From the NCBI GenBank assembly GCA_048013815.1, contig CM106586.1:8680001-8744000 (forward strand): 64,000 nt of DNA, written 5' to 3'. The notes below the pieces were generated by a model, which was not told the DNA's origin, searched no databases, and was given only the letters and a program-made list of their open reading frames with translations. Below, piece by piece: positions 2,890-33,710 of the stretch; position 1 is the first letter of the stretch; the number at the start of each line of letters is the position of its first letter. The DNA comes from Setoptus koraiensis (lineage: Eukaryota > Animalia > Arthropoda). The position numbers and the translations under genes were made by a program.

Positions 2890-3789
2890 ATGGCGCAAGT
2901 GGGCCTGTCGGTGGGCGCCCTGGTGGGGCCGCTCGGCGGGCTCGGCCAGCAGTTGGCCGGCGCGGCCAATTATCCCGTGGGCCTGGCTCATCCATCATCG
3001 TCGCCGTATCACCATCGTGAGCCATATCATCATTATCAGCCTGTTCATCATCATCATCACCATCATCATCATCTGGCAAAGCGACTGGTGGCCATCGAGG
3101 AGATGGGCGCCAGCGCGGGGCCCGACTTGTCGTCGGTTTCGTATGTCGCAAATCAGTCGAGCGGGCACGCCAATCACACGACGACGAGCCTGACGAGCGT
3201 CTCAAATTCTGGCGGCGCCATAACGACGACGACGAATCAATCTAATTTAATATTATCTGCATCTGGGGGGGCCGCCACCGACATAAGCGAAGAGGCCGAG
3301 CTACGGATGTTGAATTTTCCCGCCAAAAGTGAAGAATTATCGACTGCCATTCCATTGACAATCATATTTGCCTTACTACTAATAACAGGTTGCATAGGTA
3401 ATATTTGTACCGCTATCGTTATTGTGAGACCAAAGAATCGTTATATGCACACGGCGACAAATTATTATCTGTTCAGTTTGGCTTTGAGTGATTTCTTGTT
3501 TCTCGTGCTGGGCCTGCCACAGGAAATGTTCTCGTTGTGGCAGCGGTACCCGTACGTGTTCGGGGAGACATTTTGCATTGTTCGGGCCTATCTGTCCGAG
3601 GTGGCCACCCTGGCCTCAATATTAATTATAAGCGCGTTCACCGTGGAACGCTACGTGGCCATTTGTCACCCGTTGTGGGCGCACACCATGTCTCAATTGC
3701 CGCGCTGCATCGCCATCATTGTCATCATCTGGATAGTGGCCTTCTTTTGCGGAATCCCGCCCGTCATATCGCTGGGCATCGTCACTCAG
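2890..3789 (+). CDS. PRXamide (pyrokinin/CAPA, neuromedin-U-receptor-like) class A GPCR, coding exon 1 (N-terminus, TM1-TM4)
   Basis: gccATGG start; motifs GNICT (TM1), MHTATNYYLFSLALSD (ICL1/TM2), YPYVFGETFC, AFTVERYVAICHP (ERY). Exon ends CAG|GTGAGT at 3789/3790 after exactly 300 codons (phase 0). Confidence 0.95.
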
Positions 3790-4409
3790 GTGAGTCCCCT
3801 CTCCTACTCACGCCTCGCGCCCTCATGCCTCGCGCCTTTACGGGCCCCGGCCCGCACCCGAGCTTGTGGCCGGCCCGCACCCGCGGATGTACCCGCAGCC
3901 GCGTATCAGCGACGTTTATGCACGTCGGCGGCATCAGACGTGCATAAACTAGCCATAACTAGCCACATTAGGCACAGGTGACTCGGGCGATTCTCAGGTA
4001 GCCGGCGCCTCTCGGCTGCGATTTATGCCGGCCCGTGATTTATGGCCCCGGGTCTGTCGTCTGGCGCCAGACATCCAGACAGTCGGGCGGGCGCCGTTAT
4101 CCGCGTTATCGCCCGAGCGGCATCGAGCGGCATTGATTTCGGCGGCAGCCCGGGGCCAGGCCGCTTATCAGCCGATTATGCAGCGGCAGCCAACTAGTGA
4201 AATGCGTCATTCTCACTCTCGACTATTCTCTCCCATTTTACCGCTCTCCCGTTTTACCGCTCTCCCGTTTTACCGCTCCCCCTCTCGCCCGCTCTCCCTT
4301 TCGCCCGCTCTCCCGCTGCCGATCTGTCGGCCGGTCTCGGTCGGTCTCGGCCGCTCATTACCCGACAACTCATCAACTTGGCACCGCCCACAAAACCTGG
4401 CACCGCCAG

Positions 4410-7400
4410 AGGGGACCCATAAGTGATAAAGTGCTGCAACAAACGGCTCAGTGCGTCCAAAAGCAAATTGTTTTTGAGAATATGTTTGAATTTAGTGCTA
4501 TTGTGTTTTTCATTATACCAATGATCATCGTAACTGTGTTATACGTGCTAATTGCCATTGAATTGCGCAAGAGCTCCAATATGAACTCGATGCAATCGTC
4601 GACGTTCCGATCTAAATCATCGCTCATGACAAATGGCGGCGTGAACGCGGCCTCCGACAGCGCGCTCAACAACAACAGCGCCTGCTGCAACAGCAATAGG
4701 GGCGCCTCTAGGGGCTCCACAATAATATATTCGCCCACGGCGTCCACCTCAAACTACGTTCAACAACACCAGCACCATCACCACCAGGCGTCGTGTCAGC
4801 GCCAGACCAGCAACAACAGCAGCAGTTGTTGCAACTACTACTACTACAACTACAACGCTAACGTTGAATGTGACAACAGCAACAATAATTGCGATAATTA
4901 TGACAAATGCGACGCTAATTGCGCCGACAACCAATCCGTCGGTTGTTGCCTGGCGGCGAGCGGCGATGACGCAACAATGCAGCGCCGACGCAGCTCCGCA
5001 ATGACGACCGCCAGCAGCGTCAACAGCCCGTGCCACGTTGGCAAGACACTGAACGGCAACAACAACAACAACGGCAACAACAACGGCAACCACAACTGCA
5101 AATCGACAACAACAACAGCTCGACAACAACAACAACAACGACAGCCGAATCAGGACAGATCGATCAAGGGCTGCAAGTCGAGCGCCGTCGACTGTCATGC
5201 ACCTGTGTCGCGCTGCTCCATTTGCTCGTTGTCGTGTCCGCCTAGACTCATGACGTGCGATACCGCAACGAGCAGCGACAATGTGGCCAGCAGCGCCGAC
5301 CACGGCCGACAATGCCCCACAGCCGGAAGTTGTAAAGCAACCGGAAGTTGTAAGGCAACCGGAAGTTGTTACGCGTCGACCGGAAGTTGTTATGCGTCGA
5401 CCGGGAGTTGTCCACGTGCGCCAACCACCGGCGCTCCACCTCTTGCAGCAGCAACAACAGCGACAAAGCCCGTGATAGTGAGCGACTCGCTGCAGTCGTC
5501 GGTGGTGCAGGGGGCGACGCACACAGACAATGACTTAAACGAATTAAAAAACTGCGATACGAGACACACAACTGTCAATTGTGAACAAAACAACAATAAT
5601 TGTCATTTAAACAATTATTATTCATGTCATCGGTTGTCCAGCGATGCTGCCGAGCACCGTTGTGAGCACGACAACACGCACAACCAGCGGCACAGCAACA
5701 TTTATTATCCCACGACAACGATAAAACTCAAGAGGGGCCTCATAGAGAGCTCATGCAAAATTCTCACCAGTCTCACCTTTATCCGGCGTCAGGCGACTCA
5801 ACGCATGACAAGTGCGCCCAACAACGCCAGACAACAAAAACAGCGCCACCATCAGCACTATTGCGACTGTTCGTGCACGCTTGTGGGGCCCGCCGCCGCC
5901 GCCCCCGACCAAATCTACTCTGGCCAGCAGCAGCAACAACTTGTCAGAGGGGCCCCCGTCGAGCGCCCGGCCACGGGTCAACGGCACAACTCGGGCGTGG
6001 GCATATCGCTGGAGTCGCCGTCGACGGCGTCGTCGTCGCCTAATTGGAACCAGTCGCCCATCAGTGATAAGCAGCTGAAAGGTCACGCAGCGGAAGAAGC
6101 GGACCGGCCGGCGTCAACTCCGGCCGCGAAATGGCCCAAAACGGGCTCGTCGTCGCCCAAAATACCGTCGTTGTCGTCGTCGGCGGCGTCGTCGTCTTCG
6201 GCGTCGTCAGTTAATAATATTATCAGCCTAGTGGATGACGATGCAGCCATGGTTGCTGGCAGCGGCGGCAGCAGCAGCGCCCAGAGCAACCAAAAATCGC
6301 AAGATAATATTTTTGACGAGCTCCACTCGGCGAGCGGCTCCGACGCCGATAAGAGGCCCCAACAACGCGCTGCCAGAGACCATTGCGCAGCAAGCACGTT
6401 GCTCGATCTAGACGACAGCTCAGAGTGTGCGGCCAGCGGACGGGCCCACTTGGCGGCAGTTGGCGTGGGCGTGAGTGACAAAAGAAAATTGGGGCCACTC
6501 GGCGACCATTGGGCCGGCGACAAACGGGCCGCTGAGCAAGCGAGCGAGCAGCATCAATCAAAAGGCAGCGGCCAGCAGCCGAGGCACCGCGGCGTTGCTG
6601 CTCGAGACACGCCGGCCAACAACAGCGACAACAACAACAACAACAGCGACAACAACAGCGCCAGCAGCAACGACAGCAACAACGACAGCGGCAACAATAT
6701 GAAAAGTGTCATTGTCACAAGTGCGACAACGACAACAACAACAACAACAACAACAACAGCAACAAGATTACATCATCATGCCGGCCCAGATAATCGTGCG
6801 CCAGTTGAGCCAGTTGCTAGTGGCGCCGCCAGAACAGCTGACACAGGAGATGACGCTGCTGTACTATTACATAATCATCATCGTCAACATGAGATCGCGG
6901 GCCAGTCGATTGTGAGCTGCGAGCCGGCGGCCGCAGCGCCCACGACGGCCACAACAGCGCCAACAGCGCCAATAGCAACGACACCGACAACAACGCCGAC
7001 ACCGCCGACAACGCCAACGACGCCGACAACGCCGACAACAACAACAGCAGCAGTAAATCACATATCAGCGGCGCCCATGGACTGCAGCCGAAGCGCCCCC
7101 TCGCTACACGAGCCGGGCCTCAATCCGATGAGTCGGCAGCGCGACCACGCCAGCCTCATGCTGGCCCAATGTGACCGTTATCATCATCGCCACCGGCACC
7201 CGCACCCGTACCCGCACTTGCCGCACCCAGACCAAGCTGCTCAAGAGCGAACGACCACGTGCAACGGGCACCACCAATTGCATCAATTTGGGCCCCAATT
7301 CGGGCATCATCGCAATCATTACAATCATCACAATCATCATCATCATCACAGTTATAATTATGTCAACAGTCGCCAGTGCAGGCACCAGCACCAGAACAGC

Positions 7401-7488
7401 AGTCAATTGTCGGCGAGCAACAATCAGCAATTAGTGAACAGAAGAACGGCCGCGGCCTCGTCCAAAAAGTCCGTCATCAGGATGTTGG
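4410..7488 (+). CDS. PRXamide GPCR coding exon 2 (ECL2, TM5, giant ICL3, start of TM6)
   Basis: ECL2 Cys and TM5 (QCVQKQIVFENMFEFSAIVFFIIPMIIVTVLYVLIAIELRKS), then a stop-free low-complexity frame to AASSKKSVIRML G|GTGAGT (phase 1 donor at 7489). The acceptor at 4409/4410 (ccgccag|AGG) is the most plausible phase-0 site; cag|TGC ~4450 is an alternative. Confidence 0.88.
5320..5410 (+). repeat. In-frame 18/21-bp coding repeat (ATGSCK/ASTGSCY)
   Basis: CCGGAAGTTGT at 5323, 5341, 5359 and 5380, with a variant CCGGGAGTTGT at 5401. Confidence 0.9.
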
Positions 7489-7519
7489 GTGAGTAGCTCA
7501 AATCACAATTTGTCATTCG

Positions 7520-7650
7520 CAAATCAAGCGCGACCCGAATCGCGAATCGAGCGACTCAAATCGCCAATCGAGCGACCCGAATCGCGATTCAAGCGACCCG
7601 AATCGCGATTCAAGCGACACAAATCGCCAATCAAACGAAACAAATCAATT
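7520..7650. repeat. Degenerate ~21-bp tandem repeat (CGACCCGAATCGCGATTCAAG)
   Basis: Two near-perfect and several degenerate units immediately after the giant-intron donor. Confidence 0.7.
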
Positions 7651-7973
7651 CGGGCCAACAATCGCATGCGCACACTTGCGAGCTCTGTCCGGCCCGATGC
7701 AGTTGCGTTCCGCGGGGGCCAGACATCGGGCCGCTCGCCAGTAGCGCCGGTTCAGTTGCCGAAAAAGAGACAGCTTAGTTAGTTTGACAGTTTAAATATA
7801 GCGCGCGAAACAAACCACTAATGAAGCGAACACAAACATCGGCGCCAGGTCAGGCCCACTTCCGGTCACCATATCTACCCATATACATGCCGTGCACACC
7901 CGCATACATATATGTGTTTGTGTGTATATAGTGACAGTGTTGTTTTGTGGCCAGAAATTGCGCCTTGATTGAA

Positions 7974-8045
7974 TTGTTGTTGTTGTTGTCGTTGTTGTTG
8001 TCGCTGTTGTCGCTGCTGTTGCTGTTGTTGTCGTTGCTGTTGTCG
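7974..8045. repeat. (GTT/GCT/GTC)n trinucleotide microsatellite
   Basis: Read directly from sequence. Confidence 0.9.
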
Positions 8046-8692
8046 TATCTGATACAACAACCGCCGAGGAAGCGGAAGTAGCTGCCATCTGCCGTTCGCC
8101 TCATACAGCTGACATCGTCATCATCGTCAATGCGACTTTTGTTGCTTCCTCTCTAGACATGCTGCCAGCATGATACTAGACGGTGTCTAGTAGACACCTG
8201 TACTGAGCGTGGAATCTTTTTTCTGCATTGTTTGTCGTGATGCTGCAAGCGAGCACAAGGCATCGCATGGCAGCACCGACAACAACAACAACATCGACAA
8301 CAACGGCAACAGCGACAACAACGACAACAGCGACAACAACAACAGCGTCGGACGACCCAGAATCTAATCAATTGCAACGGGCGCCATGTAAACACGCTCG
8401 CCGGTCATATGATATTATGCAAGCGAGCGCTATACGCGCTATATATACGCGGTATATTACGTAATTCTCACTGCGCGCACGAGGTAGTGTGTGTGTGGCC
8501 GCAGAGAATTCAATTGATGTCAGTAGTGTGTGTGTGTGCAAAGCTGGCAAGTCATTCATATGCAAATGAGGGCCGGTCAGACGGGGAGAGAGGGCCCACT
8601 TAATTGTACAATTAAGCGCAACAAACGCGTCGCCTATAGGCGTTCGCGGCGTCCCCCTGGCCGCGAGAGAGTCGCGCCTCTGTACGCTGTTG

Positions 8693-8717
8693 CACACACA
8701 CACACAGACACACAGAC

Positions 8718-8794
<77 letters not shown>
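8693..8794. repeat. (CA)n microsatellite
   Basis: Perfect CA run 8723-8794 (36 units) with an interrupted 5' part. Confidence 0.97.
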
Positions 8795-8798
<4 letters not shown>

Positions 8799-8855
8799 AT
8801 CTATTTGCGTGCTCTATTGATCTATTTATGCACCGTGTTTGTGTTTGCATGCACC

Positions 8856-8971
8856 CACACACACACACACACACGCACACACACGCACACACACACGCAC
8901 ACACACACGCACACACACACGCACACACACACGCACACGCACACGCACACGCACACGCACACACACACACA
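8856..8971. repeat. Compound (CA)n/(CACACG)n microsatellite
   Basis: Read directly from sequence. Confidence 0.95.
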
Positions 8972-11900
8972 AGTGAAGTATCTAAGTAAGCAAATTAGTG
9001 GGGCAGAGAAACGTCTTTATGCCGTCTTTATTCAGTCTTTATCCAGCCGAACAATTTGCTTACTCTCTGACTTTGCCAATAAATGCCAGACGCTCTCGGC
9101 AGCGCTATGTGTGGGGCGCCTCGGCGCGGCTTGGTCTGGCTGTTTATGGCATTTATCCGTTGTTGTATATCTGACGAAAGGGGGCGAGACGGTGCGCGCC
9201 ACATCGCGTCGGACATATATGTGTGTGCGCGCATATACGTATATGCGTATATCGCTCGGACTGGCCGGCAATTGTGAGAGTGGGGCCAATATCAGGGATA
9301 TTGGACAATGCACTTGTTACAAATCGCCTGCTCGTGCTCGTGCTCGTGCTCGTACGTACTCGTGCACGCGCACGAGTACGTACGAGCGTGTGTGTGCAGT
9401 AAACAAGCGCTGCCAGGCAAACAGGGCGCCCAGAGAGATAATGCGCCCTTGTTGCGTATTACGTAACAATGCCAGCCAGCCAGCGATGCTCCAACAAGTC
9501 TATACAATAAATCAGATGTTGCCAGCACTATCTGTTAGATGCCGCCAGTTTATTGCTCTTGTTTTAGGCATTAGCCTGGGCACTACTCTGTGCCTCTGCA
9601 TATACTCCACGGGATAGCGGCCCGAAATAGACTAGGCCCGTGGCTCGCACTGGGTACAGCGGGCGCCTCTGGTGGCCACGGGCGCCACCAAAGGCGAACC
9701 ACACTGTACTGCGTGCACGTGCAACAGCACGCCCGATAGCCGCGCGGGCCCGCAGTCACCTTGTTTGCGCACCCGTGTTTCCGTCTGATTGAACTCGCGT
9801 GCTAACCAAGATTGCGCAATAGTTTCGCTGGCTACCGCTGTTGTTGCTGTTGCTGTTGTTGCTGTTGTTGTTGCTGCTGTTGTTGCCGCCGTTGTTGCTG
9901 TGGGCCTTTGTGGGCTCCATTGTTTGCCGGGGCCCCGATTCGTCTGCTGGGGGGCGCTTGCTGGGGGGCGCTAGCTGGAGGGTATCAGGTTGTAACGGCG
10001 CACTTGATGACTTTATAAATGGCCGCACTTGTCCATGAATATATATTGATATGAATATAAACATTGCGGCCGGCGCGCAGCGCCAGCAAACAACCTGTTC
10101 GCCGAATCGTGTCACTCCGTTGCAATCGTTCGAGTCGTTCGAGTCGCTCGAGTCGTTTCAGTCGCTCGAGTGTGCCCGCCGGGCCGGTGCGGGCCGCGAT
10201 CCGCCACCGTGGCGGCCCAGCCGCACGCTCGGGCACGGCGGTCTGGCACGGTGCCCATCGGAGCAAACTTTCCACTGGGCAAACACATTTGTCGCCCCGT
10301 TTCGGGCCATTTCGAGCCCGGAATCGCGCCGATATGAAGGCTGGAATCGCGCCGATGTAAAGGCTGGAATTTCGCCCATATAAAGGCTGGAATCGAGCCG
10401 AAATACACGCTAAAAGCGAGCCGAAATACGCGCTGAAAGCGAGCCGAAATGTCGGGCGAGTCGTCGGCCAGCAACTCGGATCGCGCAAGCGGCAGCCGAG
10501 GGGGCGCCCGCAACCGCACAGACGAGCGATAGTGGCGCCAGATAATGGCGACCCGCGCGAGGCTAGCTGTCAATTGCGATTAGCGATGCTTGTTTGTCGT
10601 TTGTAACGTCTCATTTTTGCAACGGTGACACAAGCGCCCAAACTTTGGGCCGCAAAGACAAAGATAATTTGCTGACGGATTGCAGCAAGACGCTGATTGG
10701 GCGCCATTGGGCCCATCGAGGCCCGATAATGGGCGCGCAATGTCGGCTCGATCGTTGGCCGTTGACACCAGTTTGTTGGGGCCAGTTTGTCGCTTTATCG
10801 GGGCCAGTTTGTCGGTTTGTCAAGGCCAGTTTGTCGGTTTCTCGAGGCCAGTTTGCCGGTTTGTTGCGGCGCTCCGACCACGGCAACATTTGTACAGACA
10901 AACGCGCTGTAAACAGCTCCGTTCCGACACAACTCACGACGATTCAACTCAAGTCAAATTAGACACAAAATCAGCATAGTGATCGATTGCTCGAATTCGG
11001 TGGGGCCCACCGAATTCGAGGCCCAGCAAAGAGCGAACAGCAAGGCGAGAGCAACCACAGATCGTCCGTCATTGAGCCATCGTTATCAGCGGCGGGGCGA
11101 CCGGTCAATTATCGCTTCATCAACTCAGTTGATTCAATTGTGAGACGTGCCGAACAGGCCGCTCCGGCCCGAGAAACCGTTTTTCCGTTCCTGAGAGTCT
11201 CGTTCGGACTGAGACTCTCAGACTGGCAGTCATTTCGGTCGGGCCAGAAATGGAGCCCATTTGAGTCAAATGATTTGACTCGAACGATTTGGGGCCCGAA
11301 GCCCGAAATCATTTGGCCAACTTGGAGCGAGCCATAAAATGGGCTCGCTCTGGCCGTTGCGTAATAGGCAACGTGACCTCGAGCAGCAGCTTGTTGTTTT
11401 GCTTGGGCCGGCTGGTGCCGGCCCAAGCAAAAGTTTGCTGAAAAGTTGAACAATTTGCTGGCCACGAGAAATTCAAAATGCCGGCCAGCGAGCGACCTGG
11501 CCGCGCAAAACTTTGCCAAGTGCGCAAGTTTCTGGCCCGCCGATTAGGCGCTCACCGGACTCGCCGGGCCTGCCGGGCCCGCTGGCCTCACTGGTTTCGC
11601 TGGCCTCGCTGGCGCCCCCAATCGCGCGACTGTCGGCATTTTGGGCTCGCTTGGCAACGTTGCAGCAGCGTCGCAGCGACGTAGAAATGACGCCGAAACA
11701 CCGTTGAAACAATGGGGTCCCGGCGGCGAGCGAGCCCGACCGAGCAAGAACAAGGCGGCCGAGTTACCGCACGGGCCCGCGACCGAGCGGCCCACGACCG
11801 AGCCACCGAATGAGCGAGCCCACAAGCGAGCGAGCAAACGAATGAGCGAGCCCACGAGCGACCGAGCCCACGAGCGACCGAGCCAACGAATGAGCGAGCG

Positions 11901-12562
11901 CGAACAAACAAAGTCGCGACCTAATTTAGTGATTTTATTGATTCTTTGCGAGATAATTTGTTGCAGATGTTGTCATTGTTGTAGCGCTTATCTGTGGCCC
12001 CATCTAGCTGCGTCTGTTTGTTTGTGTTTGTCTGGCTTGTCTGCTGCCAAGATATGAATGAATGGATGACGGAACAAGCGGCAATTACACACCAAGTCTG
12101 CGCCGCCAGTCTGTGGCCTTCTCGCTCGCTCGGCGCGTTCTCAGGCGGCGTCGTTCGCGAGTCGCGACTCGCGACCTAGCGACGTTCGCGACTCGCCGCC
12201 TGCGCGCGCCGTGTGCGGCGGTCAGATATGCGCGCTAATAAATAATGCGGCTCCCTTTCATTTCCCGTTGGCGCTCTCGGTCGGTTGGCGCGCGTTGTGG
12301 GCGTTCAGCGCGACGAGATCAACAATCTCGAGTCGGGTATTCGGCGGCGGCGGCGGCGGCGCCAATCTCGAGTCGGATATTCGGCGGCGCGGTCTTTTGT
12401 TCGGTCGGATATTGAGACGGTTGCAAAATAAAAACATTATCACGGTTGTTAATCCGGCGCGATCAATCCGGCGCGCCGCGCCGGGCCGGTCTGCTCGATG
12501 CCGGTGCGCTCCGTCGGTTCGCGCCGGGTTGAGTCGCCGGCGGTCGGATCACCGTGATACTA

Positions 12563-13826
12563 TAGGATGTGCCAAAAGTCGTTAGCTTTATTGAGTAGAA
12601 TATGAAATAACATAACAAAACTCGTCACAAATCGAGATATTCGCCTTCTTTCTCTATCACAAGCTTCAGTCTTTCTCTCAGACTCTCTATGCCGCTTTTA
12701 TAGAAATCCTCAGATTTCGATGAAAAGTAGTCATCTACAGCTGAGGTTGTCTCACTCTCTGTTGCAAAAACTCTGCCTCTCAAGTGAGTTTTCAAATTTT
12801 TAAAAAGATGATAATCACTGGGAGCAATATCTGGGCTGTATGGCGGGTGCTCAAGAAGTTGAAATTTGTGTTTGTTGAAAACTTCGACAACTTTCGCCGC
12901 TGAGTGAATGCGCGCGTTATCTTGAAGAATTATCGGATTCTTCGATAGCAGGCCATGTCTTTTCTTTGGCAGAATGTTTCTCAATTTTTCAATCAGGTTA
13001 GCATAATACACTGCATCCATACCCTTCTTGGAGCTTTGCCTGAAATAATCGACCAAAATTATACCTTTTCTGTCCCAAAACACAGTCGCCATCACCTTCT
13101 TTTTGTTGTCTGGAATACGACTTTGTGTCGGCCTCCCTTCGTGACTAGCTCTCCACTCCCTTCCGCTCTCCCTGGTCTCTGGTGTTGAGTAACATACCCA
13201 GGTCTCATCACATGTGATTAGTCTTGATGAAAGTTCGTCCCACTTCCGGTCCCAAGTTTTCAAAATCTCGCGCGCAACGCGCACTCGATCGAACTTCTGC
13301 GCCGATGACAAGTTTTTGGGTACCCATCTTGCATAGAGTTTCTTCATGTTTAGATAATCATTCGGAATTCTCCTCACTGTTGTGGGTGCTGAAGCAGTGA
13401 CCGCTGCTAATTGTCTGACACTTGTTTTCCTATTGGCTTTTACAAATTTCTCAATTAATGGTTCAATTGTGGCCGAAACAGGGTGCCCCGATCTGGCCCC
13501 ATCTTAGGCACTGAGGTGCCCGGTTTTGAACTTTGCACACCAATTCTTGATTTTTGCAAAGCTGGGCTTTGCATCTCCATGAGTTTTTAGAAAGTAATCA
13601 TCGATTCCTTTAGGTTTTTTTCCACTTTTGAAGTGATCGAGAATGATAATTCGATATTGTGAGGGATCCATTTTTGCGAGAAATCAAATTGTGTGAAAGC
13701 GAGAAGAGAAAGAAAACCCATTTTGAGCCCATCTAACCGCAGCACATAGAATATTGCAACACAGAAGATTGCATAAAATTCGAACAAACTGGAGCAACGG
13801 AAGCTAAAGACTTTTGGCGCACCCTA
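12563..13826 (-). mobile_element. Full-length mariner (Tc1/mariner, D,D34D) DNA transposon, 1264 bp
   Basis: 26-bp TIRs TAGGATGTGCCAAAAGTCGTTAGCTT (12563-12588) and AAGCTAAAGACTTTTGGCGCACCCTA (13801-13826), 3 mismatches. TA duplication at 12561-62 and 13827-28. AT-richer than the flanks. Confidence 0.96.
12625..13671 (-). pseudogene. Mariner transposase, 348 codons, one in-frame TAA at codon 56
   Basis: Frame continuous from ATG 13671 (MDPSQYRIII...) to the stop at 12625. TAA at 13506-13504. Motifs WVPKNL, TCDETW, QDNARIH and HPPYSPDIAPSDYHLF, with exactly 34 residues between the 2nd and 3rd catalytic Asp. Confidence 0.95.
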
Positions 13827-15381
13827 TATCACGTGTGTGTGCATGTGGCCCGACGCAGCCGTAAATAGCGCATATTATCGCGGCAATACGAGCCGATATT
13901 GGCCCTCTATTTATCCGCACAGCCAGATCGTGTCTATATATATCATGTATTTATGTATCATGTATTTATATATCATGTATATATATATATACATCATGCA
14001 GATAGCGCACCGTCTATGTGTAATTAGCCGGGGATTAGACTCGTTTTATTTGCAAGCGGCAGGCTTGGCGCCGGCATAAATCCGTGCCGTGCCATTGTGC
14101 TTATTGGCCGGCCTCCGTCGGGCACAATTGTAATCCCGGCAATATGCTCGCCGAGCAGTTCGCCGATCCGCTCGCAACAAGCGCCGGCCGATCCGCTCGC
14201 GACGAGCGCCGATATCCGCACAGGCGAGCGATATCCGCACAGGCGAGCGATATATCGCGGTACACAGCGGCGAGCGTGCGATATCATATTATTATATATT
14301 GTTATATTATATTATACCGTGTTATATTGTATTATGCTCCGACAGCGGCGAGCGGCCGCAACTGTTTTATGGCGCCCGGCCGTCAGCTGACAGGGCAGCT
14401 CTCTCAACCGACGGGGGCGCTAAATGATGATGATGATGACGGCCGATCATGATTACTGTTTATTATTACGCAACAACACTTCTCGGTTTGGCTCGCACTT
14501 TACTGTTCTCACTGTTTGTTTGTTGGCGCTCTCGCTCGCTCGCGGGGATATTACTTACAACTGCGCACCGTGCGACTAGCTACTGCTGGCTAGCGAGCTA
14601 CTTTCGGCTGGCGAGATACTTTCCGTCGGCCCATTCACTCATTCATTTGTGGGCCCCTCTCTGCCTGTGTGTGCCGTCTGAGCAGGCACGGGCACCGTTA
14701 CTCCGAACACACTCGTGCCAGTCGAGATATCAGCCAGATACAATCGCATTTGCTGTGGGCCAATAATAGACTGTGCGTTGCACACAGTTATTCACTTAGC
14801 TCGCTGTTTGCCTGGCCGAACAGCCAAATGATGTATTTGGCAGCTGGCCCGAGCTCCGTCTGGCGGAGCCAAGCACCCGCCGGAGAGGGAGCCAAGCGCC
14901 GGCCGCAGACGGAGCCAAGCGGGCTGCCAGAGACCGGGCCGGCGGACGGCCAAGTGAGCACCCGATTGGGAGACAGAGCGAGCGGGAGACAGAGCGAGCG
15001 CCCGAGTGGGAGACAGAGCGGGAGACAGGATGGGAGACAAAGTGAAAATAGATCCGGATCATGTTCCACCTCCATGTGTGCCTGTGCGGAGGCCCAGATA
15101 AGATAGCGCGCATACTTGGACAGCATGCAGCGGATATACGCTGGATGTGCGCTGGATATATGGTGCATTTGTGGCGCATGTGGCCCCCCCGAATCGCGCC
15201 ACCACCAGCATCCAACGGCCGACAGAGGAAACAAAATAGATTATGCAGTAAGTGTATATATAACTGCGAGTGTCACTCTGCACTCGGCGCCTCTCTCGGC
15301 GACCATGTCGATATGTCGCAATGTGCCGCTATGTGCCGCTATGTCTCCATCGGCTCTGTCTAATCTATTACTCTCTGTTTA

Positions 15382-15419
15382 GTTGTTGTTGTTGTTGTTG
15401 TTGTTGCTGTTGTTGTTGT

Positions 15420-15451
<32 letters not shown>

Positions 15452-15510
15452 TTGTTGCTGTTGCTGTTGCTGTTGCTGCTGCCGCTGTTGCTGTTGCTGT
15501 TGTCGCTGTC
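15382..15510. repeat. (GTT/GCT)n trinucleotide microsatellite
   Basis: About 43 triplet units. Confidence 0.95.
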
Positions 15511-15997
15511 CGTGGTGGTAGCGCCAACAACAACAGCTTGTCATCGTCGCCGGCCAGACGAATGATAGATGAATTATATCTGCTCTGCTATATGTATTGC
15601 TGCGTCTGGCCAATTGTTGTCGCGCGCGCGCCGAGACCATGATACACTCCGCTGGCCACTCCGATCGGCCCGTCCGATCGGCCCCGTCCGCCGTCGGGTT
15701 TGCGCCGAGCCGCGCGCGGGCTGCACTGTGTCATCCCGACACACAATGCACATCTGGACTTGGCTAGCTTGACTTGTTGTCGCCACTGGCCGGCGCACCG
15801 TTTAACCGCTTGGCGCTAGCCAGCTGCCCAGCGGCCACTTGCCGGCGGACTGGGCCGCTTTCGCGGGGGCGCGCAGCCCGGCAGCCACGGCCGGCTGAGT
15901 GGCCCCGGCGAGAGATTATGATACACACTTACTAGTTATTATTGCTATTATTCGCGCCAGCGTCAAATGGCCACTATCAGGCTGTTTGGCTGTTTGG

Positions 15998-16090
15998 CTA
16001 TCTGGCTATCCGGCTATCCGACTATCCGACTATCCGACTATCCGACTATCCGACTATCCGACTGTCCGACTATCCGACTATCCGACTATT
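15998..16090. repeat. 8-bp minisatellite (CTATCCGA)n
   Basis: About 9 near-perfect units with degenerate CTATCTGG/CTATCCGG edges. Confidence 0.95.
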
Positions 16091-16521
16091 TGGCTGTGAA
16101 GCGGCGCCGGCGCCAGCAGCGGCTATTAATTTCTGGCCTGCCATTTTCGCCATATCCTTGCCTCATTGATATCGCGCCCCGAGTCGCCCCACTGAGAGCA
16201 GTTCGCCTCGCTGATACCAATAGGCCGAGAGCGGCTCGCCGAGACCAACTCAGCGAGACCAACTGAGCAAGACCAACGCCGGCCAACACTAATAATGGCT
16301 GCCAGGCCAACAATGGCCGGCCATTATTACACGGAAGTTATGCATTCCGCCACTGCAAGCCAAGACGAAACGGACTGAAATGAAACCACGAGATGAGATG
16401 ATATGATATGATATGACACACACACACAGGCCGTGGGGCCCGTTTCTCTGACCCAATAACCAGTCTGTCGCTGGCCCCAAATGAACGCCAGCGACATGTA
16501 TCATCGGCATTATCATATTAT

Positions 16522-16607
16522 GCGCTCTTTGTGTATCTTTGCACATCTTTGCACATCTTTGCACATCTTTGCACATCTTTGCACATCTTTGCACATCTTT
16601 GCACATC
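16522..16607. repeat. 10-bp minisatellite (GCACATCTTT)n
   Basis: Six perfect units 16541-16600 plus degenerate flanking units. Confidence 0.96.
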
Positions 16608-19600
16608 GTTATACGTCGCCTCACATCGCCTTATATCGCTCGCTGCGGGCCCCACAGTACGCAGTCGTCTGCCGCGCTTGGCCCCAAAGAAGAAGCTAAT
16701 TTGTTGTTGACACTTTGGGGCCCCAAATTAGTTGCTGGCCTGGCGGCCCAGCGCGCAGTTTAATCCAGTGCGCTCTTTGTGCGCGCCTGATCCGGTGTGA
16801 ATGGCCTAATTATTGTGCCGTTGATCTATTGTTGCCGTTGTCTCTCGGCTGCATAATCAATACCAATCACTTGCGTTCGCGCGCCCCCTCTCAACAACGC
16901 GCCTTAAGAACGCGCCCTAAGAACGCGTCTCGGCAAAGGGGCCGCGGCCCCGCCCACGTGCACGCAACCCAGATATGACATACCAGCGCATATTGCTGAC
17001 ACAGATTGCAGCGCGTTGTTGCGTTATTTTGTGGGAACCTCCCACAGAATCGCCACAGACTCCCAAAGAATCACTCCCGCGCTGGAAGTGGCTCCCGCGC
17101 GGGCAGACAAAAGCGCCGGCTTCCGGCAATCAGCCGAGCGGCTGTGACGGGTCGCTTGTCGGCGCTGCAGCCGGCCCGGCCGAGTCAGCCGAGTCGGCCC
17201 AATCAATTTATCTGAAAACGGGCCGGTGTGTTGATTTCGCAACAGCGCCGGCGACACCGACGGCGCGGGCAGCGCGCGCGGCACGAGACGAGCCGGGATT
17301 TGGCGCCCGGGCGGCCCCGGTTTATTATTGGAGCGTCACGTCCCGCAACAACTGTTATTAGTGGCCGGTGAGCTCACCTAACGCAAGTGCCGAGCGGGGG
17401 AGTTTGTTGGTTTGTGTTTGTATGTTTGTTTGGTGTTTGTAAAGACATAAAAAGATTTAGGGCCAACAAGAATGTTTTAGGCAAAGCATGACCGAGAAAC
17501 AAACGCACTGGCACGGGCCGTCGGGTCACGTACCGAGCGGGCAGCGCTGAAATAGAGACAACGCGGACGAGCGAAGCGAACAAGCAGCGAAAGAGGCGCG
17601 AAGAATTTCGCGCACCCACTAAAGAATTCGCGCCAGTAATAATTCCGGCGGCAATTACTGACCCGCCGATAGCTGGTCACCGTTGGGTCATGCCGGCATT
17701 ACACGCACTAACTGCAGTTGGGCGCCCCTTCCTGTGCGCGCGCGTGTACCCGACAAGTGAGTCGCGAACGGCGGCGGCTTCTTTTCGGCCGTCTCGGGCT
17801 GCGCGTTGCCGCCGCTCACTTAAAAAGCGATGATGATGATGAGCGGAAAAAGCCAGTCAGTGTGAGTTTCGAAGCCATTTGCTCGGAATGATTTACGACC
17901 AAACAACCGGCGCGCCGCGGTGTCTAGTTACCCCGTACCTTGGCCGGTGCCGCCGCCGGGCCCCATTTGGGTCCCGCACGGCTCCCCCGTCCAGGCTGGC
18001 CCTACTGGGAGGCCGCGAGTGGCAAGTGTTGCCAGTGTTTCGGCCGGTTTGGGCCGGCTCGCGCCAGTTTGGGCCGGCTCGCGCCAGTGTGCACTGGGGC
18101 GCCGTGTCCGGCGAAATCGCTCCGTCGGTGCATTGTTCTTGCCGTTGGCCGACAACATTATCGACGTGCATCGGTGGTTGAAACTAATTCGAGCTGAGCT
18201 GCCAGCGCGAGATAATCAACACTGCACGACCGGCGCAGGTAACCAGCGACTCGCGCTCGCATTATTCGCTCATTTGGCTCCATTCGCCCTCCATTAGCTC
18301 GCTGTCTGGCGGGCCGGATAATATCCACAGTGCGTACATACTGGACATGGACACTCGTTGTGTGCCGTGCCGGTAACGGTGCGCGTGCGGCGCGCACGCG
18401 GTGTCCGGCGGCCGCTCGTCCGAGCGGCCAACCGGCGATCCGGCGATCAACGGGCGCGCGCGCGCGTGCCATTGTATGCGACGCGCAACGACCGGCAACG
18501 AGTGAGGCGCTGCATTATTATTGGCGCCAGTTCGTTATACAAGTTGGGCGCATTAATCACTTGCCGTTGCGACCCGAACCCTAATGAATCTTCGTCTTGT
18601 CTCGCCGGACAGAAGAAAAAGCAAGGCGAGCTAGAGGGAGCCGGAGGGAGCGAGCGAACGACGTGGGGCCTACGTTCGCCGGCCCGCCGATGGCACTGGC
18701 CGGCCCGACAATGGCACTGGCCGGCCTGTGTCGCCCATGGAGATTAGGCGCGATTCAGCGCGCCCAAGCAACGAATAACGACCGCCTGATTGACAACAAT
18801 CATTTCCAGCCGACGCTCGGCAGCCAACAATGACGAGCGGCGCCCCGACGATGTCGCGCCCTCGTTGCAGCATGATTGACCACTGACTCGCGGGCCGGCA
18901 TGCCGAAAAGTCGGCTCCGTCGGTCGCCGCTCGCCATTCGAATCACCGCAGTTCGAATCATAGCAATACGAATCGTCGCAATCATCTCATCGCCGATTGT
19001 GTTCACTGGGCGCGGTGTACAGGTATTTCGGGCGACAACACAGCAGAGGCTGCACAAATTGAATTGGCCAAGGTCGCGATCACCACTTGACGGCCGCGAG
19101 TAGCTGTCGCCCGTGAGAGAATTCACTTTCGGACAAAAATGTGACAGCAGCAACGCCAGCGGCCACATTTGGAAACTCGTGCACCGAAAAAACTCTCGAA
19201 AAAACTGCCCCTAGAATAAAAGAAATCGCTTCGATTTCTTTTATTTTTTCCAACAAATTTGTCCGATGCGAGCGATTGGCGAGCTGTCGACAGGGCCGGC
19301 CGCAATGCTAAACTTCTTTGCGGTCGCTGGTGGCGCCGCTCGAGTGGAGACCACTTTTTATAAATGTTAATGTTGTTTTCGGCAACAATGAAAATCGCAT
19401 CGCCGGCCATCGCACGAGCCCGAAAACTGGCGAGCAGCGAAAATTTCCCCACGGCCCACAGGAAATCTTGTCGGTATTCCAGCGCGGACAGCGTCTTTTG
19501 TGTATATATCTATTTTTGTTTTTCGTTTCCACCAATAAATTGTGTGGCCCCGTAGTGGGTGTACATGCACATTGTTACAAGCTCTTGGCGTGCCGCTATA

Positions 19601-20984
19601 ACCTCTGTTCTTTTATGATTCTTGACTCCGAATTCGGATTCGAATGGGCGAGATGCCGACACAAAAGCCGGCAGCGGCGAAAGAATTCGATGCCGAGACA
19701 CGAGAATAGATTCGTTTATTAATCGATTGCAGACGGGCCCATTGATAATACAAACACGTATATGTTTGCATCTGGCAAGTTTTCGTCCGAGTCGCCGAGT
19801 GTCGCGGCTCCACAAAACAGTGGACAGTTAATTTTTCAGCGCAACACACAAGTGACGAATGACGGGTGCAAAGTGCACCGATTTGTCTTGATCTCTGGCA
19901 GTGTCGCCTAAGCGATGGGGCCGGCAAGATAGTGGAGCTGGTTGCAGGCAAACAGTGGAAAGAATGTTCGCGAATAGCCCAAAGAATCACAAGAGTCTCA
20001 GAAAAGCCAACTGAAGTTAGTTTTAAACAATCAAACTTATTTCCTGTCTTGTCGCGCGCATTGCTCAGGGCGGTCATTATAGTTATATAAGGCGCGCGCG
20101 ACAGCGAGTTTTATAAGATGCGAAACCCTTTTATCGGCGTCATCTGGCCCGCTGGCGCATCACGAAAATCGTCGAAAAGTCGTCTCGAGTGGCGACAAGT
20201 CCGGGCAGCGAAATTCTCAGAATTCAAGCTGCATAACACAGCATGCCAGCGGAATAGTGGAAATGGCGCAAACGAGCCATGATCAATCCGATTCATCCGG
20301 CTTGCTTGCGGTTACTTGCACTGCACAACAGATTGAGCTTGATAAATTAAACTGAATTGAACTTGTCACTCCATGACTCGTCGCCGGGCCCGGCCAGCCA
20401 AACTCAACGTGTACGCTGGCCCCAGCGGCAGCCTCTCGATTTGAGAGTCTCGAAGTCCGGCGGGTCGCTTGCACTCGAATTCGAGGGCTCTCTCTCTCTC
20501 TCTCTATCTGGCTGTTTGCAATGCGATGACGCCGACGACGAGCTGATTGCCTTGAGCTGTCCAAGACAACAACAGACTCTGTTGAACAGAGCGACCATGG
20601 TGAGATGAGATGATGCGGCGACAACCGGCATGGCTCAGCAATGCGATGCTCGTTGTCGCATCATCTCATCTCATTTGATGCAATCTCGCCTCTTCGATGA
20701 TTTGATGGCAAGGCGCGATGCGATCAAAAGTGATGAAATGCAGTGTACGATTTCGTGTCGCTCAAACGTTGCACCAATCGGGCCCCCCTCTGTCGCTATT
20801 TTCACGCACCAGCCCGCCAGATCGAGCGAGCGCACAGAGGGCCCCGAGCTAGGCAATGAAACATGTCAACATGAGAGGGCTCAATCTTGGCGCCTATCGG
20901 CGCCCATTATTGCCACTGGCGACCGGGGGCCGACGGGGCCGAGGCCGGGCTCGCCACCGGCGGCTACTCGACTGCCTGAGTCTA

Positions 20985-21073
20985 GCTGCTGGCTACCGGG
21001 GCTCGGCTGCTGGCTACTGGGGCCCGGCTGCTGGCTACTGGGGCCCGGCTGCTGGCTACTGGGGCCCGGCTAC
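20985..21073. repeat. 21-bp minisatellite (GGCTGCTGGCTACTGGGGCCC)x3+
   Basis: Three perfect units 21005-21067 plus one degenerate unit. Confidence 0.93.
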
Positions 21074-24000
21074 CGTAGCCCGGCAGTTTACAAGTGTCAT
21101 AATGGTGGCCAATGGAGTAGGCGAATGGAGTCGCCTGGGCGCTCTGGAAAGTCTCACATTGATAGTGGCACTGTGAGAGTTTCGCAGAATGTGACATCAT
21201 CGCTAGCGATGGTGAATATTAACTGGGGCCCGGCTCGAGTTTATGTTCACCATCGCCAATTGACTTTTTGCCTTGCAGCGCCAACTTGCGGGGTCAAGTT
21301 ATTGAGCCAAGCGGGGCCCGTCGCAAGCTAACAACTGGGTTGCATCGGGCCCCATATCACTACACGGCTCTACGGATATCTCTATATACGGCAAAGCTGG
21401 GCATAACAAAGCGGCCCGAAAAGAATTAATTAGGAATTCGAATCACACAACAAAACAACATGAGGGCGCCGTCACTAGTTAGCTGGTTGCGAATGAGCCA
21501 ATGAGTAGCTGCTTAGCAGTGCGGCGGCCAATTTGCGCGCGCCAGAATTTTATAGCAGCTCATTTCTGGCCGCTATCTGCTCTCTTCATCATCGCTCAAC
21601 TCAATATTAATCTCTCTCGCTTAGTTATTACCGGCTTGAAATTTAGACCGCTTAATATACCGCTCGCCATACATCCGCCCTGCGCTATACATAGCTCAAA
21701 ATAGCGCTATTAGCGAGTATATATAGTAGCGGAAATGTCCAAAGTGGTCTCAATGACGCAATGCAAGTCTAGAACATTCGCTGGCGGACTTTCGGACGTT
21801 GTGTGGAAATGACTAGAATGTTTCATGCGTTCTTGTTGCAGCTGATTGCGGCGTAATTTGCATTTGTCGATATCGTTGTCGTGCATGTCAAATGTGACCA
21901 ATCTTCCAGAGCGAGAGAGAGAGAGCAGAGAGGTTTCTGAAAGAAGATGCAAGCGGATTCTCAGAAAAAAGCGCCGCTCAATTTGAATCGCTCTGTTCGG
22001 TTCTGTTCGGTTCGTTTCGTCTGGCATCCTCGGCATTTGACAGAAACGAAATTTTGTCGCCGCTTCACTGGCCCGCCGACAGGACACAAATGAGCCAGGC
22101 CAAATTTTGCCGCTGTGCTGCCCCCCCCCCCTTCGCCAAGATTCAAGCCGGTGCGTGTCGGACCAGCCACTAATTGTAGCCACTAGCGGAATGCGCGCAA
22201 TCTCAGTCGGGCCGTCATTTGTCTGGGCGCCCGATGCGTCTTGTCATTTATCATTTTGGCGACTCTTTCTTCGCGCGGTACAGCGAAACCGAACCGGCGA
22301 CTGTCAAACTCTTTCACTCACACTGTAAGCCGCCGCCGCATCGATTTGTGTGCCGCTGCTCGAAATAAAACCGAAAATAAACACACTCAATTTCACCTTG
22401 TTAAGCTCCATGTAACTATATGTAACTAAGCCAACCAATATGTAGCCAGTTTTCGGACACACACTGGCAAGCTCGCTAGACCGTCAGAGGTTGCTTGGAT
22501 GGACGGACACTGTATACATAATATATGTGTGAGTGTGTGTGTGTGTGCGGATAATATACATAATAGACATGGCTACAACTAGTAGTTATTGCGTCATGAT
22601 TGCCATGATCTTTAAAGTGCGCCTCCTCGTCGCTTATCTCCTCGGTATACAGTAGCTCGGTATACAGTAGTCGTATACCGAGGAGACTGACTGTGGTGTG
22701 CAGTGTTTGAGTGATTGATGATGCAATGTAAATAAGGTTGCCCAAACATAAACACACAAACAAACAAACAAACATATTTTATCCGCTGTCTGACTGACTG
22801 ACTGACTGTTGTTGTTGTTGTTGTTGCTCTGACAGATACTTTAACCAACACATAATTTGCACACGGTGCGTTGGAGTGGCGGCAGCGGCGGCAGAGATTT
22901 GTTGTGTGGCGGCGGGGATTCGTGCGCAAGAAAAAGATTTTTGAAAAAGGATTTGCGAAAAACGACGACTCGTGAAAAAGATCCGTGAAAAAGATCCGTG
23001 AAAAAGATTCGCGAATAGAGATTTTCAGTGTGGAGCCGGGAGAAGGCCGAAGATTATTGTCACATTGATCAGCCCGGGCGTCGTGTGTGTTTGTCGTGGC
23101 AACGTCTTGCCAAACGCTCACAGATGAAGACGTTGCGTTTTGTTTGCCTACTTTTATTCCTGTTCGGTGTGTTTGAGTCGAAACTTTTGAGTACCAGAGA
23201 GCGATATGCAAAATATACAACAATATTGTTGTAATGCACACAATGCCATGTATGAATGAAGTGATATCAAAGTTGCAATTAGTGTGTCGCAGCGCGTCTA
23301 AATGAGACTCGCCATCTCAAACATTTTCCTCTTATTAGCTGGCGAGGTATTTGTCTTTCTGTGCGTCTGTCTGCGCTGCTAGTGCTGCATTTCGGAGCAA
23401 TTTCGGAGCAATTTTTACAATCGGCAACGCTCGCTTGGCAAAACACAAAACGTAATAACGTAATAACGTAATAGCTCATTTTATATTCGGCTGGCCTCGG
23501 ATGTGCTCGGCGACAACAGCAGCAACAACAACAGCAACAACGGCGCTGAATAATGACTCGTCAATGGTGCCATTTATTTGTTGCTGTCGTCTTGGCTGCC
23601 AGTCGCTAGTTCGCGTTCCAAATCGCTTCCTCCGCTCGAAGCTCTTCATTAACTCGCCCGTCGGTACTATGTGCATCATATGTACATATTGTCGCATATA
23701 CATTTTGTTTGCATGTATCCAGCGAGCGACTGAATACGTTGCCATGACGACAATAATCGCACAATTTAAATCACACTCGCACATAATGATGCGTCTGTGC
23801 CATATGGCATCAATCGGTTGGCAATTAAAGCTGGATGGTTTCAAATATGAACTCGACCGCATCGACAGCGATCCATCACGAGGCCGCTCGATAATGAACG
23901 GGCTCCAAGCGGCCTTCGGCTGGCTTTCACGCAAATTTATCCACATTTATCGCCTCACTTATGCCCCGTGTGTGTGTCAGTCGGCATGCACGCCATTCAC

Positions 24001-31242: not shown

Positions 31243-31273
<31 letters not shown>

Positions 31274-33663: not shown

Positions 33664-33710
33664 GTTACATAACGGTTACATAACGGTTACATAACCGTTA
33701 CATAAGGTTG
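33664..33710. repeat. 11-bp tandem repeat (GTTACATAACG)x4
   Basis: Read directly from sequence. Confidence 0.88.

What the first reader, a model, noticed from the sequence alone, without database searches (positions are those of the whole stretch)
4566..7488. Neuropeptide GPCR with a ~970-aa third intracellular loop
Between TM5 (..IAIELRK) and TM6 (SVIRML) the frame stays open for ~2.9 kb. It encodes a Cys/His/Asn/Thr/Gln/Ser-rich low-complexity loop, giving a ~1765-aa receptor with a ~370-aa C-tail. Known PRXamide/NMU receptors are a few hundred residues long. A disordered insert of this size could act as a phosphorylation/arrestin scaffold, a metal-binding region or a condensate-forming region (inference). 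It may also reflect relaxed selection plus slippage expansion.
Basis: partly seen in the sequence, partly recalled or inferred. Interest (0 to 1): 0.8.

Follow-up and report, generated by a model that had tools for sequence, protein, structure and literature searches.

The report
Mite neuropeptide receptor, giant inner loop
A pyrokinin-type hormone receptor gene of a gall-mite-like genome carries an uninterrupted 964-codon floppy loop between its fifth and sixth membrane helices, four times the human maximum, but related mites and many other receptors of this genome have such loops too, and no RNA data show that it is made in full.

Summary
The gene is a three-exon rhodopsin-type GPCR on the + strand:
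- exon 1, 2890-3789, TM1-4;
- exon 2, 4410-7488, TM5 plus loop;
- exon 3, 43886-45204, TM6-7 plus a tail of about 360 aa.

Between IAIELRK and KKSVIRML lie 964 codons (4572-7463) with no stop. The five other frames have 19-53 stops, and shuffles average 32. Three DNA runs carry the stretch. AlphaFold2 sees no structure outside TM5.

The receptor is a PRXamide (pyrokinin-1/capa-like) receptor of eriophyoid mites. Nine orthologous loci have loops of 287-641 aa, including the GenBank protein KAG9511066.1 of Fragariocoptes setiger. One nested ortholog has about 30 aa. A paralog (594 aa) and seven other GPCR genes of the same genome have 477-2841 stop-free codons between TM5 and TM6, with the same S/A/T/N/Q/H-rich composition. 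This scan had already noted such loops elsewhere in this genome.

Only about 8 residues after TM5 and about 21 before TM6 are conserved.

Best reading: a translated, disordered and largely unconstrained spacer, grown by in-frame low-complexity expansion in a permissive loop. A stop there would cut off TM6-7, which keeps the frame open. No RNA data exist, so partial splicing is not excluded. I found no evidence for a special metal-binding or scaffold role.

The parts
2890..3789 (+). Exon 1: N-terminus of about 140 aa with a His run, then TM1-TM4, ERY motif; phase 0, donor gtgagt at 3790
   Evidence: (7tm_1, 1.8e-28, profile 1-129)
3790..4409 (+). Intron 1 (620 nt, GT..AG); absent in ortholog L006, about 7 kb... 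not so: L008 has a short one; lengths vary among relatives
   Evidence: two 10-nt indels here between close relatives
4410..7488 (+). Exon 2: end of ECL2, TM5, whole third intracellular loop, first residues of the TM6 extension; 1026 codons + 1 nt
4482..4586 (+). TM5 helix with its cytoplasmic extension (..FFIIPMIIVTVLYVLIAIELRK..)
   Evidence: AlphaFold2 helix at residues 2-36 of window:4479-7490, pLDDT 83-93; 7tm_1 profile 153-193
4572..7463 (+). Third intracellular loop: 964 stop-free codons; S 13.5, A 11.3, T 9, N 9, Q 6.3, H 6.2, C 4.3 %; predicted disordered
4572..4595 (+). Conserved proximal juxtamembrane piece (SSNMNSMQ; consensus RSSxMNS in all orthologs)
5057..5143 (+). (CAA)n-type triplet repeat (poly-Asn/Gln); very abundant word in the genome reads
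5323..5411 (+). 18/21-nt tandem repeat encoding GSCKAT/GSCYAST units
6617..6765 (+). CAA/GAC/AGC triplet repeats (Asn/Asp/Ser run), then an (ACA)n poly-Thr run
6952..7046 (+). 9/27-nt repeat encoding a Pro/Thr run
7428..7488 (+). Conserved distal juxtamembrane piece (QLVNRRTAAASSKKSVIRMLG), the basic cytoplasmic extension of TM6; near-invariant in all orthologs
7489..43885 (+). Intron 2, about 36.4 kb (gtgagt..ttcag); holds a mariner-like ORF (12625-13377, -) and a nested antisense gene (39537-40824, -)
43886..45204 (+). Exon 3: TM6 (CWSPFH), TM7 (NPILY), helix 8, low-complexity C-tail of about 360 aa, stop
   Evidence: 7tm_1 profile 165-260 at G000:C2:8723723-8724064 = window 43723-44064

Best explanation
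This is an intact gene for a PRXamide-type (pyrokinin-1/capa-like, NMU-receptor family) class A GPCR of an eriophyoid-type mite. Its exon 2 encodes a 964-residue, intrinsically disordered, low-complexity third intracellular loop.

Shown:
- The frame is open far beyond chance.
- The stretch is present in independent DNA data.
- The two loop ends that extend TM5 and TM6 into the cytoplasm are conserved.
- The interior is not conserved.
- Orthologs and many unrelated GPCRs of the same genome carry loops of 0.3-2.8 thousand residues with the same composition.

Inferred:
- The loop grew by repeated in-frame insertion and slippage of CA-rich triplet and short-unit repeats. It grew at the one place in the fold, besides the tails, that tolerates insertions, because TM1-5 and TM6-7 fold as separate units.
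- It stays open because it is translated. Any stop or frameshift would remove TM6-7 and kill the receptor.
- G-protein coupling is carried by the conserved juxtamembrane segments.
- The interior acts mainly as a tolerated spacer. By its bulk and its many Ser/Thr it may damp or gate access of G protein, kinases and arrestin, as long ICL3s do in other receptors.
For: - Open frame: 0 stops in 964 codons against 19-53 in the other frames and a mean of 32 in shuffles.
- Gene model with canonical splice sites and matching phases.
- ERY, CWSPF and NPILY motifs are intact.
- DNA contigs of three runs agree. Loop indels are 9 and 3 nt, and net differences are multiples of 3. Intron indels are 10 nt.
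- Against organism B the loop has 10 mismatches in 2411 nt and intron 1 has 6 in 359 nt (Fisher p = 0.012). Exon 1 has 1 in 830.
- AlphaFold2: TM5 helix at pLDDT 83-93; the rest is below 50 and has no secondary structure.
- Orthologs keep an open exon 2 ending in ..AASSKKSV[IV]RMLG|gt, with loops of 287, 292, 326, 329, 341, 518-520 and 641 aa.
- Profile search of 1.84 billion representatives: only 11 proteins at E<=1e-10. All but the GenBank F. setiger protein come from unannotated assemblies.
- Tree: one clade with 100/99 support, F. setiger branching first, the short-loop locus nested inside.
- Same genome: a paralog with a 594-aa loop. Seven further GPCR genes have 477, 600, 683, 924, 1163, 1188 and 2841 stop-free codons between the TM5-side and TM6-side 7tm_1 matches, with the same composition.
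- Human class A ICL3s span 10-240 aa, and long ones gate G-protein access (PMC10033409).
Against: - No RNA evidence at all. No RNA run holds the stretch, and the likely genome paper used no transcriptome. Removal of part of the loop by splicing cannot be excluded. One GTGAGT lies in the loop at 6471, although about 1.4 are expected by chance.
- Of the six listed substitutions against organism B, four are non-synonymous and two synonymous. Constraint on the amino-acid sequence is therefore not shown.
- In-frame indels can arise from triplet slippage alone.
- The conserved islands of the other orthologs (RPSSAIGxER, SPLSYHESLIQR) are not detectable in the window's loop.
- The AlphaFold2 alignment had only 7 rows.
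Confidence: 0.6

Rival explanations
1. The stretch is exonic in the genome annotation sense only. In the mature mRNA one or more internal segments are removed, as cryptic introns or 'exitrons', so the working receptor has a much shorter ICL3, perhaps alongside a long isoform.
For: No RNA data exist. One consensus donor GTGAGT lies at 6471 in phase 0. This organism's real acceptors lack clear pyrimidine tracts, so acceptors cannot be excluded by sequence. The loop interior is unconserved.
Against: An intron is under no pressure to stay open. Yet 964 codons here, and 477-2841 codons in eight other GPCR genes of the genome, have no stop at all. At about 2.5-3.4 expected stops per 100 codons, any removed segment longer than about 150 codons would be open with P<0.02. 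Orthologs with quite different loop sequences are also fully open. Net length differences between close relatives are multiples of three.
Confidence: 0.2
2. The giant loop is an adaptive functional module of this receptor: a phosphorylation/arrestin scaffold, a Cys/His metal-binding or palmitoylated region, or a condensate-forming region. It is selected for its size or sequence.
For: The loop is kept open and diverges about four times less than the neighbouring intron. Ser+Thr make up 22.5 %, with Cys 4.3 % and His 6.2 %. Cys clusters (CxC) and His runs recur in every ortholog's loop, and six orthologs share short linear motifs. Long ICL3s are known to regulate coupling and to recruit arrestin (PMC10033409; abstract of PMC13105114).
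Against: The same composition, including Cys and His, is found in the loops of unrelated GPCRs of this genome and in this gene's own C-tail. It is therefore a genome-wide habit, not a property of this receptor. The motifs shared by the other orthologs are not detectable here. The loop shows no similarity to that of F. setiger outside the two ends. A nested ortholog works, presumably, with about 30 aa.
Confidence: 0.15
3. The gene is a decaying pseudogene or the long frame is an assembly artefact.
For: Very low-complexity sequence is hard to assemble. Logan contigs break at the repeats 3038-3077 and 6615-6771.
Against: All signature motifs and splice sites are intact. Exon 1 is 93 % identical to a congener's. 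Three runs from two labelled organisms reproduce the loop apart from the repeat breaks. A decaying gene would not keep 1765 codons open.
Confidence: 0.03

Closest known systems
Arthropod pyrokinin-1 / CAPA (periviscerokinin) receptors, the protostome NMU-receptor family (for example the Ixodes scapularis and Rhipicephalus microplus pyrokinin-1 receptors)
   Same: 60-65 % identity over TM1-4. Same TM5 and TM6 juxtamembrane motifs, and ERY, CWxP and NPxxY.
   Different: Those proteins are about 400-480 aa long. From that length, and from the usual build of this family, their ICL3 has tens of residues. Here the loop has 964 aa and the whole protein 1765 aa.
KAG9511066.1, 'Pyrokinin-1 receptor, partial' of Fragariocoptes setiger (Eriophyoidea)
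   Same: Ortholog in the same well-supported clade. Same exon 2 layout, a 641-aa open low-complexity loop, and the same two conserved loop ends.
   Different: Its loop is one third shorter, and the interior shows no detectable similarity. It is an automatic annotation. I found no paper commenting on the loop.
Long-ICL3 aminergic receptors (muscarinic M1-M5, alpha2A, D2; human ICL3 up to about 240 aa)
   Same: Disordered ICL3 between conserved juxtamembrane helices. Long ICL3s gate G-protein access and carry phosphorylation sites for arrestin (PMC10033409; abstract of PMC13105114).
   Different: A different receptor family, with peptide rather than amine ligands. The loop here is four times longer and has no conserved interior.
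Split or fusion-engineered GPCRs (receptors cut or fitted with T4 lysozyme/BRIL in ICL3)
   Same: They show that TM1-5 and TM6-7 tolerate large insertions or even separation at ICL3. This rests on my own knowledge, plus the BRIL paper listed. It explains why such a loop can be tolerated.
   Different: Those are laboratory constructs with folded inserts. This is a natural disordered insert.
Other giant-loop GPCR genes of the same genome (D2-like with 2841 codons; others with 1188, 1163, 924, 683, 600 and 477; PRXamide paralog with 594)
   Same: Same position in the fold, same composition, all fully open.
   Different: Different receptor families. This gene is a middle-sized case, not the extreme.

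Membership tests
Rhodopsin-type (class A) GPCR, Pfam 7tm_1 | Match to the 7tm_1 profile over all seven helices | tested here: met
   Exon 1 matches profile 1-129 at E 1.8e-28. Exon 2 matches profile 153-193 at E 0.0019, below the cut-off on its own. Exon 3 matches profile 165-260 at window 43723-44064, E 2.1e-4. Scored exon by exon only; the joined model was not searched.
Rhodopsin-type (class A) GPCR, Pfam 7tm_1 | E/DRY at TM3, CWxP in TM6, NPxxY in TM7 | tested here: met
   ERYVAICHP, FICWSPFH and NPILY were read directly.
PRXamide receptors (pyrokinin / CAPA / NMU-receptor family) | Closest named relatives are pyrokinin-1/capa/NMU receptors, and it groups with them in a tree | tested here: met
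   Named hits at 60-65 % identity. Clade with the F. setiger 'Pyrokinin-1 receptor', next to trombidiform capa/NMUR2-like receptors. The tree used about 175 residues and few outgroups. Pyrokinin versus CAPA subtype was not resolved.
PRXamide receptors (pyrokinin / CAPA / NMU-receptor family) | Activated by peptides ending in PRL/PRV-amide | not testable with these tools
   Only a weak lead: a possible FRPRLGRR site after a Leu-rich stretch at G000:C2:4018246. Not verified as a precursor.
Expressed full-length receptor with a 964-aa ICL3 | Transcripts that run through 4572-7463 and join 7488 to 43886 | not testable with these tools
   No RNA run holds the stretch. The three holders are DNA, since their contigs cover intron 1 as well.
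Intrinsically disordered low-complexity region | No predicted structure, polar-biased composition | tested here: met
   pLDDT is below 50 for 945 of 1004 residues, with no helix or strand outside TM5 and the last four residues. Hydrophobic residues (FWILVMY) make up about 14 %. The alignment was shallow, which is a caveat.

The most novel reading that the evidence does not exclude
Eriophyoid gall mites have some of the smallest animal genomes. As a lineage they have nevertheless inflated the third intracellular loop of many rhodopsin-type GPCRs to 300-2800 residues and keep these loops translated. The inflation is old: it is present in the early-branching Fragariocoptes, and it was lost again in at least one compact genome. 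On this reading it has a function, for instance tuning or gating of coupling, receptor clustering or membrane anchoring through Cys clusters, and is not mere tolerated bloat.
Probability: 0.15. Interest if true: 0.75.

Novelty: new variant of a known kind. Interest (0 to 1): 0.48.

Why it matters
If translated as read, this is a natural class A peptide receptor whose TM5-TM6 linker is four times longer than any in the human repertoire (10-240 aa, PMC10033409). It is one of a whole set in one small genome. That gives a natural experiment on two questions: how much disordered mass a GPCR can carry between its two folding units, and whether ICL3 length alone gates G-protein and arrestin access.

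It also matters for annotation. Gene finders, and length-limited homology searches, will split or miss such receptors in mite genomes. It also shows protein 'bloat' coexisting with genome streamlining.

For this one gene the value is moderate. It is one middle-sized case of a genome-wide habit, and there are no expression data.

Tried and rejected
- RNA evidence: the look-up of sequencing runs gave only three DNA holders. Read laying could therefore only confirm the DNA.
- Word search with the whole exon 2 found one relative, because low-complexity words swamped the candidates.
- Word search with the more complex centre of the loop (5445-6614) found nothing. This blank means little.
- BLASTP and an HMM built from six ortholog loops against the window's loop gave no significant match. 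There was only a hint of collinearity at the CxCS cluster and SP[LI]S. I therefore dropped my early idea that the window keeps the orthologs' motif islands.
- Metal-binding reading: rejected as specific to this receptor, because Cys/His levels are the same in unrelated loops.
- Splice-site scan: uninformative.
- SRA accession search in papers: nothing.
- Literature searches for giant ICL3s in mites or arthropods, and for low-complexity expansion in mite genomes, found no description.
- Ligand gene: a pattern search gave two FxPRLG-dibasic sites, neither convincing as a precursor.
- The joined three-exon protein was not searched or folded. Exons were handled by reference one at a time.
Full report
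WHAT IS THERE

The + strand carries a three-exon gene.
- Exon 1 (2890-3789) encodes about 140 N-terminal residues with a His run, then TM1-TM4 with ERYVAICHP. It ends in phase 0 at a gtgagt donor.
- Exon 2 starts after cag at 4410 and ends at 7488 before gtgagt. It encodes the end of ECL2, TM5 (..IPMIIVTVLYVLIAIELRK), a long open stretch, and KKSVIRMLG.
- The only TM6/TM7 exon on this strand of the window is at 43886-45204 (..FICWSPFH....NPILY..). It has a low-complexity tail of about 360 aa.
- The phases fit: one base at 7488 plus TG at 43886-7 gives Val.
- Intron 2 is about 36.4 kb. It holds a mariner-like ORF and a nested antisense gene.
- Pfam 7tm_1 matches each exon in the expected part of the profile.

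IS THE OPEN FRAME MORE THAN CHANCE?

The loop proper is 4572-7463, 964 codons with no stop.
- The five other frames of the same DNA have 19-53 stops and a longest open run of 261 codons.
- 2000 shuffles gave a mean of 32 stops and never fewer than 15.
- With the stop-triplet frequency of the flanking introns the chance of none is about 3e-11.
- Tandem repeats (CAA runs, 18/21-nt, 9/27-nt units and others) cover only a minor part.
- Windowed entropy shows a mix of very simple runs (poly-N, poly-T, PT repeats, His runs) and moderately complex sequence.

IS THE DNA REAL?

No RNA run holds the stretch. Three runs, two labelled organisms in three studies, hold 75-93 % of its words. They are DNA, because their contigs also cover intron 1.
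- They reproduce the loop except where contigs break at the simplest repeats.
- The listed indels in the loop are 9 nt and 3 nt. The net length differences of the long pieces are +24 and +3 nt.
- Intron 1 shows two 10-nt indels.
- Against organism B the loop has at most 10 mismatches in 2411 nt, intron 1 has 6 in 359 nt (Fisher p = 0.012), and exon 1 has 1 in 830 nt.
- Of the six listed loop substitutions four change the amino acid. Constraint on the residue sequence is therefore not shown. Only the frame, and to some degree the DNA, look protected.

WHAT FAMILY, WHAT ORGANISM

The TM1-4 part finds named pyrokinin-1, capa and NMU-R2-like receptors of horseshoe crabs, ticks, mites, scorpions and spiders at 60-65 % identity. 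All are about 300-480 aa long. It also finds unnamed assembly proteins at 71-93 %.

One relative is KAG9511066.1, 'Pyrokinin-1 receptor, partial [Fragariocoptes setiger]'. JAIFTH is the F. setiger assembly according to PMC8907322.

The window's genome has two contigs of 24,221,962 and 24,533,333 bases. That fits the published two-chromosome assembly of the eriophyoid Setoptus koraiensis (N50 24.53 Mb), which was made without a transcriptome (PMC11920263). This identification is an inference from assembly statistics only.

RELATIVES

I fetched the contigs around eight relatives.
- All but one have the same exon 2: TM5, an open low-complexity stretch, then ..AASSKKSV[IV]RMLG followed by a donor.
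- Loop lengths are 287, 292, 326, 329, 341, 518-520 and 641 aa.
- Six of them share short islands in the same order: RSSxMNSAISKQ, a His run, RPSSAIGxER, a CxC cluster, SPLSYHESLIQR, HQxSL, a second His run, and RRxAAASSKKSV.
- A profile of the alignment, run against 1.84 billion representatives, found only 11 proteins at E<=1e-10. This loop type is therefore confined to a small clade.
- The remaining relative, L005, comes from an AT-rich, very compact contig. It has an ICL3 of about 30 aa and a 45-nt intron before TM6.
- In a maximum-likelihood tree of the TM1-4 part all these loci form one clade (100/99). F. setiger branches first and L005 is nested inside an unresolved group. The simplest reading is an old expansion followed by a secondary loss in L005. 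The tree is short (178 columns) and only midpoint-rooted, so this ordering is tentative.

THE WINDOW'S LOOP ITSELF

It is the longest of the set and its interior is idiosyncratic.
- BLASTP with composition correction found nothing significant outside the ends. An HMM of the six other loops also found nothing significant.
- Against F. setiger only the first 44 residues (TM5 plus about 14) and the last 21 align.
- So about 8 residues after ELRK and about 21 before TM6 are conserved, and the rest is free.
- AlphaFold2, with the 7-row alignment, gives a confident TM5 helix. Everything else is at pLDDT 31-51 without secondary structure.

THE SAME GENOME

- The paralogous PRXamide receptor at G000:C1:18.266 Mb has TM1-5 and a 594-aa loop in one 1120-codon open frame.
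- A 7tm_1 scan of the 48.7 Mb shows many matches inside open frames of 900-3035 codons.
- For seven genes I cut out the DNA between the TM5-side and the TM6-side match. All seven are entirely stop-free: 477, 600, 683, 924, 1163, 1188 and 2841 codons.
- They have the same make-up as here: S, A, T, N, Q at 6-14 % each, H at 2-7 %, C at 1-5 %. This gene's own C-tail is similar.
- The giant loop is therefore a habit of the genome and of the clade, not a device of this receptor. Its Cys/His content is not special.

HOW IT MOST LIKELY WORKS

Shown: the frame is kept open, the ends are conserved, and the interior is disordered and unconserved.

Established knowledge:
- ICL3 joins two halves of the fold that tolerate separation and large inserts (my own knowledge of split and fusion receptors).
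- Human class A ICL3s span 10-240 aa. Loops above about 45 aa sit over the G-protein site and sharpen coupling selectivity (PMC10033409).
- Receptors with long ICL3s can recruit arrestin through loop phosphosites (abstract of PMC13105114).

Inference:
- CA-rich triplet and short-unit slippage keeps adding in-frame sequence at a permissive site.
- Selection removes only stops and frameshifts, because TM6-7 lie downstream.
- Coupling is done by the conserved basic TM5 and TM6 extensions.
- The interior is mostly a tolerated spacer that may damp access to the cytoplasmic face.

I put 0.6 on this reading, 0.2 on partial removal by splicing, 0.15 on a specific adaptive role, and about 0.03 on pseudogene or artefact.

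The main argument against splicing is that introns need not stay open. Yet nine loops in this genome and nine in relatives are all open.

NOVELTY

The receptor family is known, and long disordered ICL3s are known. A 964-aa loop in a peptide receptor, as part of a clade-wide and genome-wide inflation up to 2.8 thousand residues, is something I did not find described. One such protein does sit unremarked in GenBank. This scan had already noted the phenomenon on other DNA of this genome. I checked two of those notes myself: the PRXamide paralog and the D2-like receptor.

I rate it a new variant of a known kind, of moderate interest. It lacks expression data, and this gene is not the extreme case.

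Noticed in passing
L005:966-2203: An ortholog on an AT-rich, gene-dense contig has an ICL3 of only about 30 aa and a 45-nt intron before TM6. It is nested inside the long-loop clade in the tree. This points to secondary loss of the loop in a streamlined genome.
   Followed up: partly
L006:4811-6859: In this relative TM1-5 and the 292-aa loop lie in one open frame, so intron 1 is absent. The sequence after RMLG runs into an intron, so the contig is genomic, not a transcript.
   Followed up: partly
L008:8560-10473: The orthologous last exon of another relative encodes TM6-7 plus a low-complexity C-tail of about 540 aa. The tails are inflated as well as ICL3.
   Followed up: no
window 12625-13377 (-): An intact-looking 250-aa ORF with the look of a mariner/Tc1-type transposase lies inside the 36-kb intron 2.
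   Followed up: no
window 8600-8990: Long (CA)n/(TG)n microsatellites lie just downstream of exon 2. They give spurious open frames of up to 270 codons, which serve as a yardstick for chance ORFs here.
   Followed up: no
window 39537-40824 (-): A nested antisense gene for a Ser-rich, His/Gly/Tyr-rich protein lies inside intron 2.
   Followed up: no
window 2890-7488 versus 43886-45204: The two ends of the gene differ in composition. GC3 is 0.63 in the loop and 0.59-0.64 in exon 1, but 0.40-0.48 in exon 3, although both low-complexity parts have similar amino-acid make-up. This looks like regional composition change across the long intron. It is unexplained.
   Followed up: no
G000:C2:4018246-4018268 (L025): A possible pyrokinin-like site, ..HSIFRPRLGRR, lies about 30 residues after a Leu-rich signal-like stretch. 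It could be the ligand gene. No start codon or further copies were seen.
   Followed up: partly
G000, rows: Several 7tm_1 matches with normal spacing of the helices lie in open frames of 1150-2450 codons (for example C1:1261403, C2:13054405, C2:17828541). That suggests giant N- or C-terminal tails in further receptors.
   Followed up: no
window 4983-5143: The (CAA)n-rich words of this stretch reach a summed contig depth above 100,000 in all three runs. This triplet repeat is extremely common across the genome.
   Followed up: no
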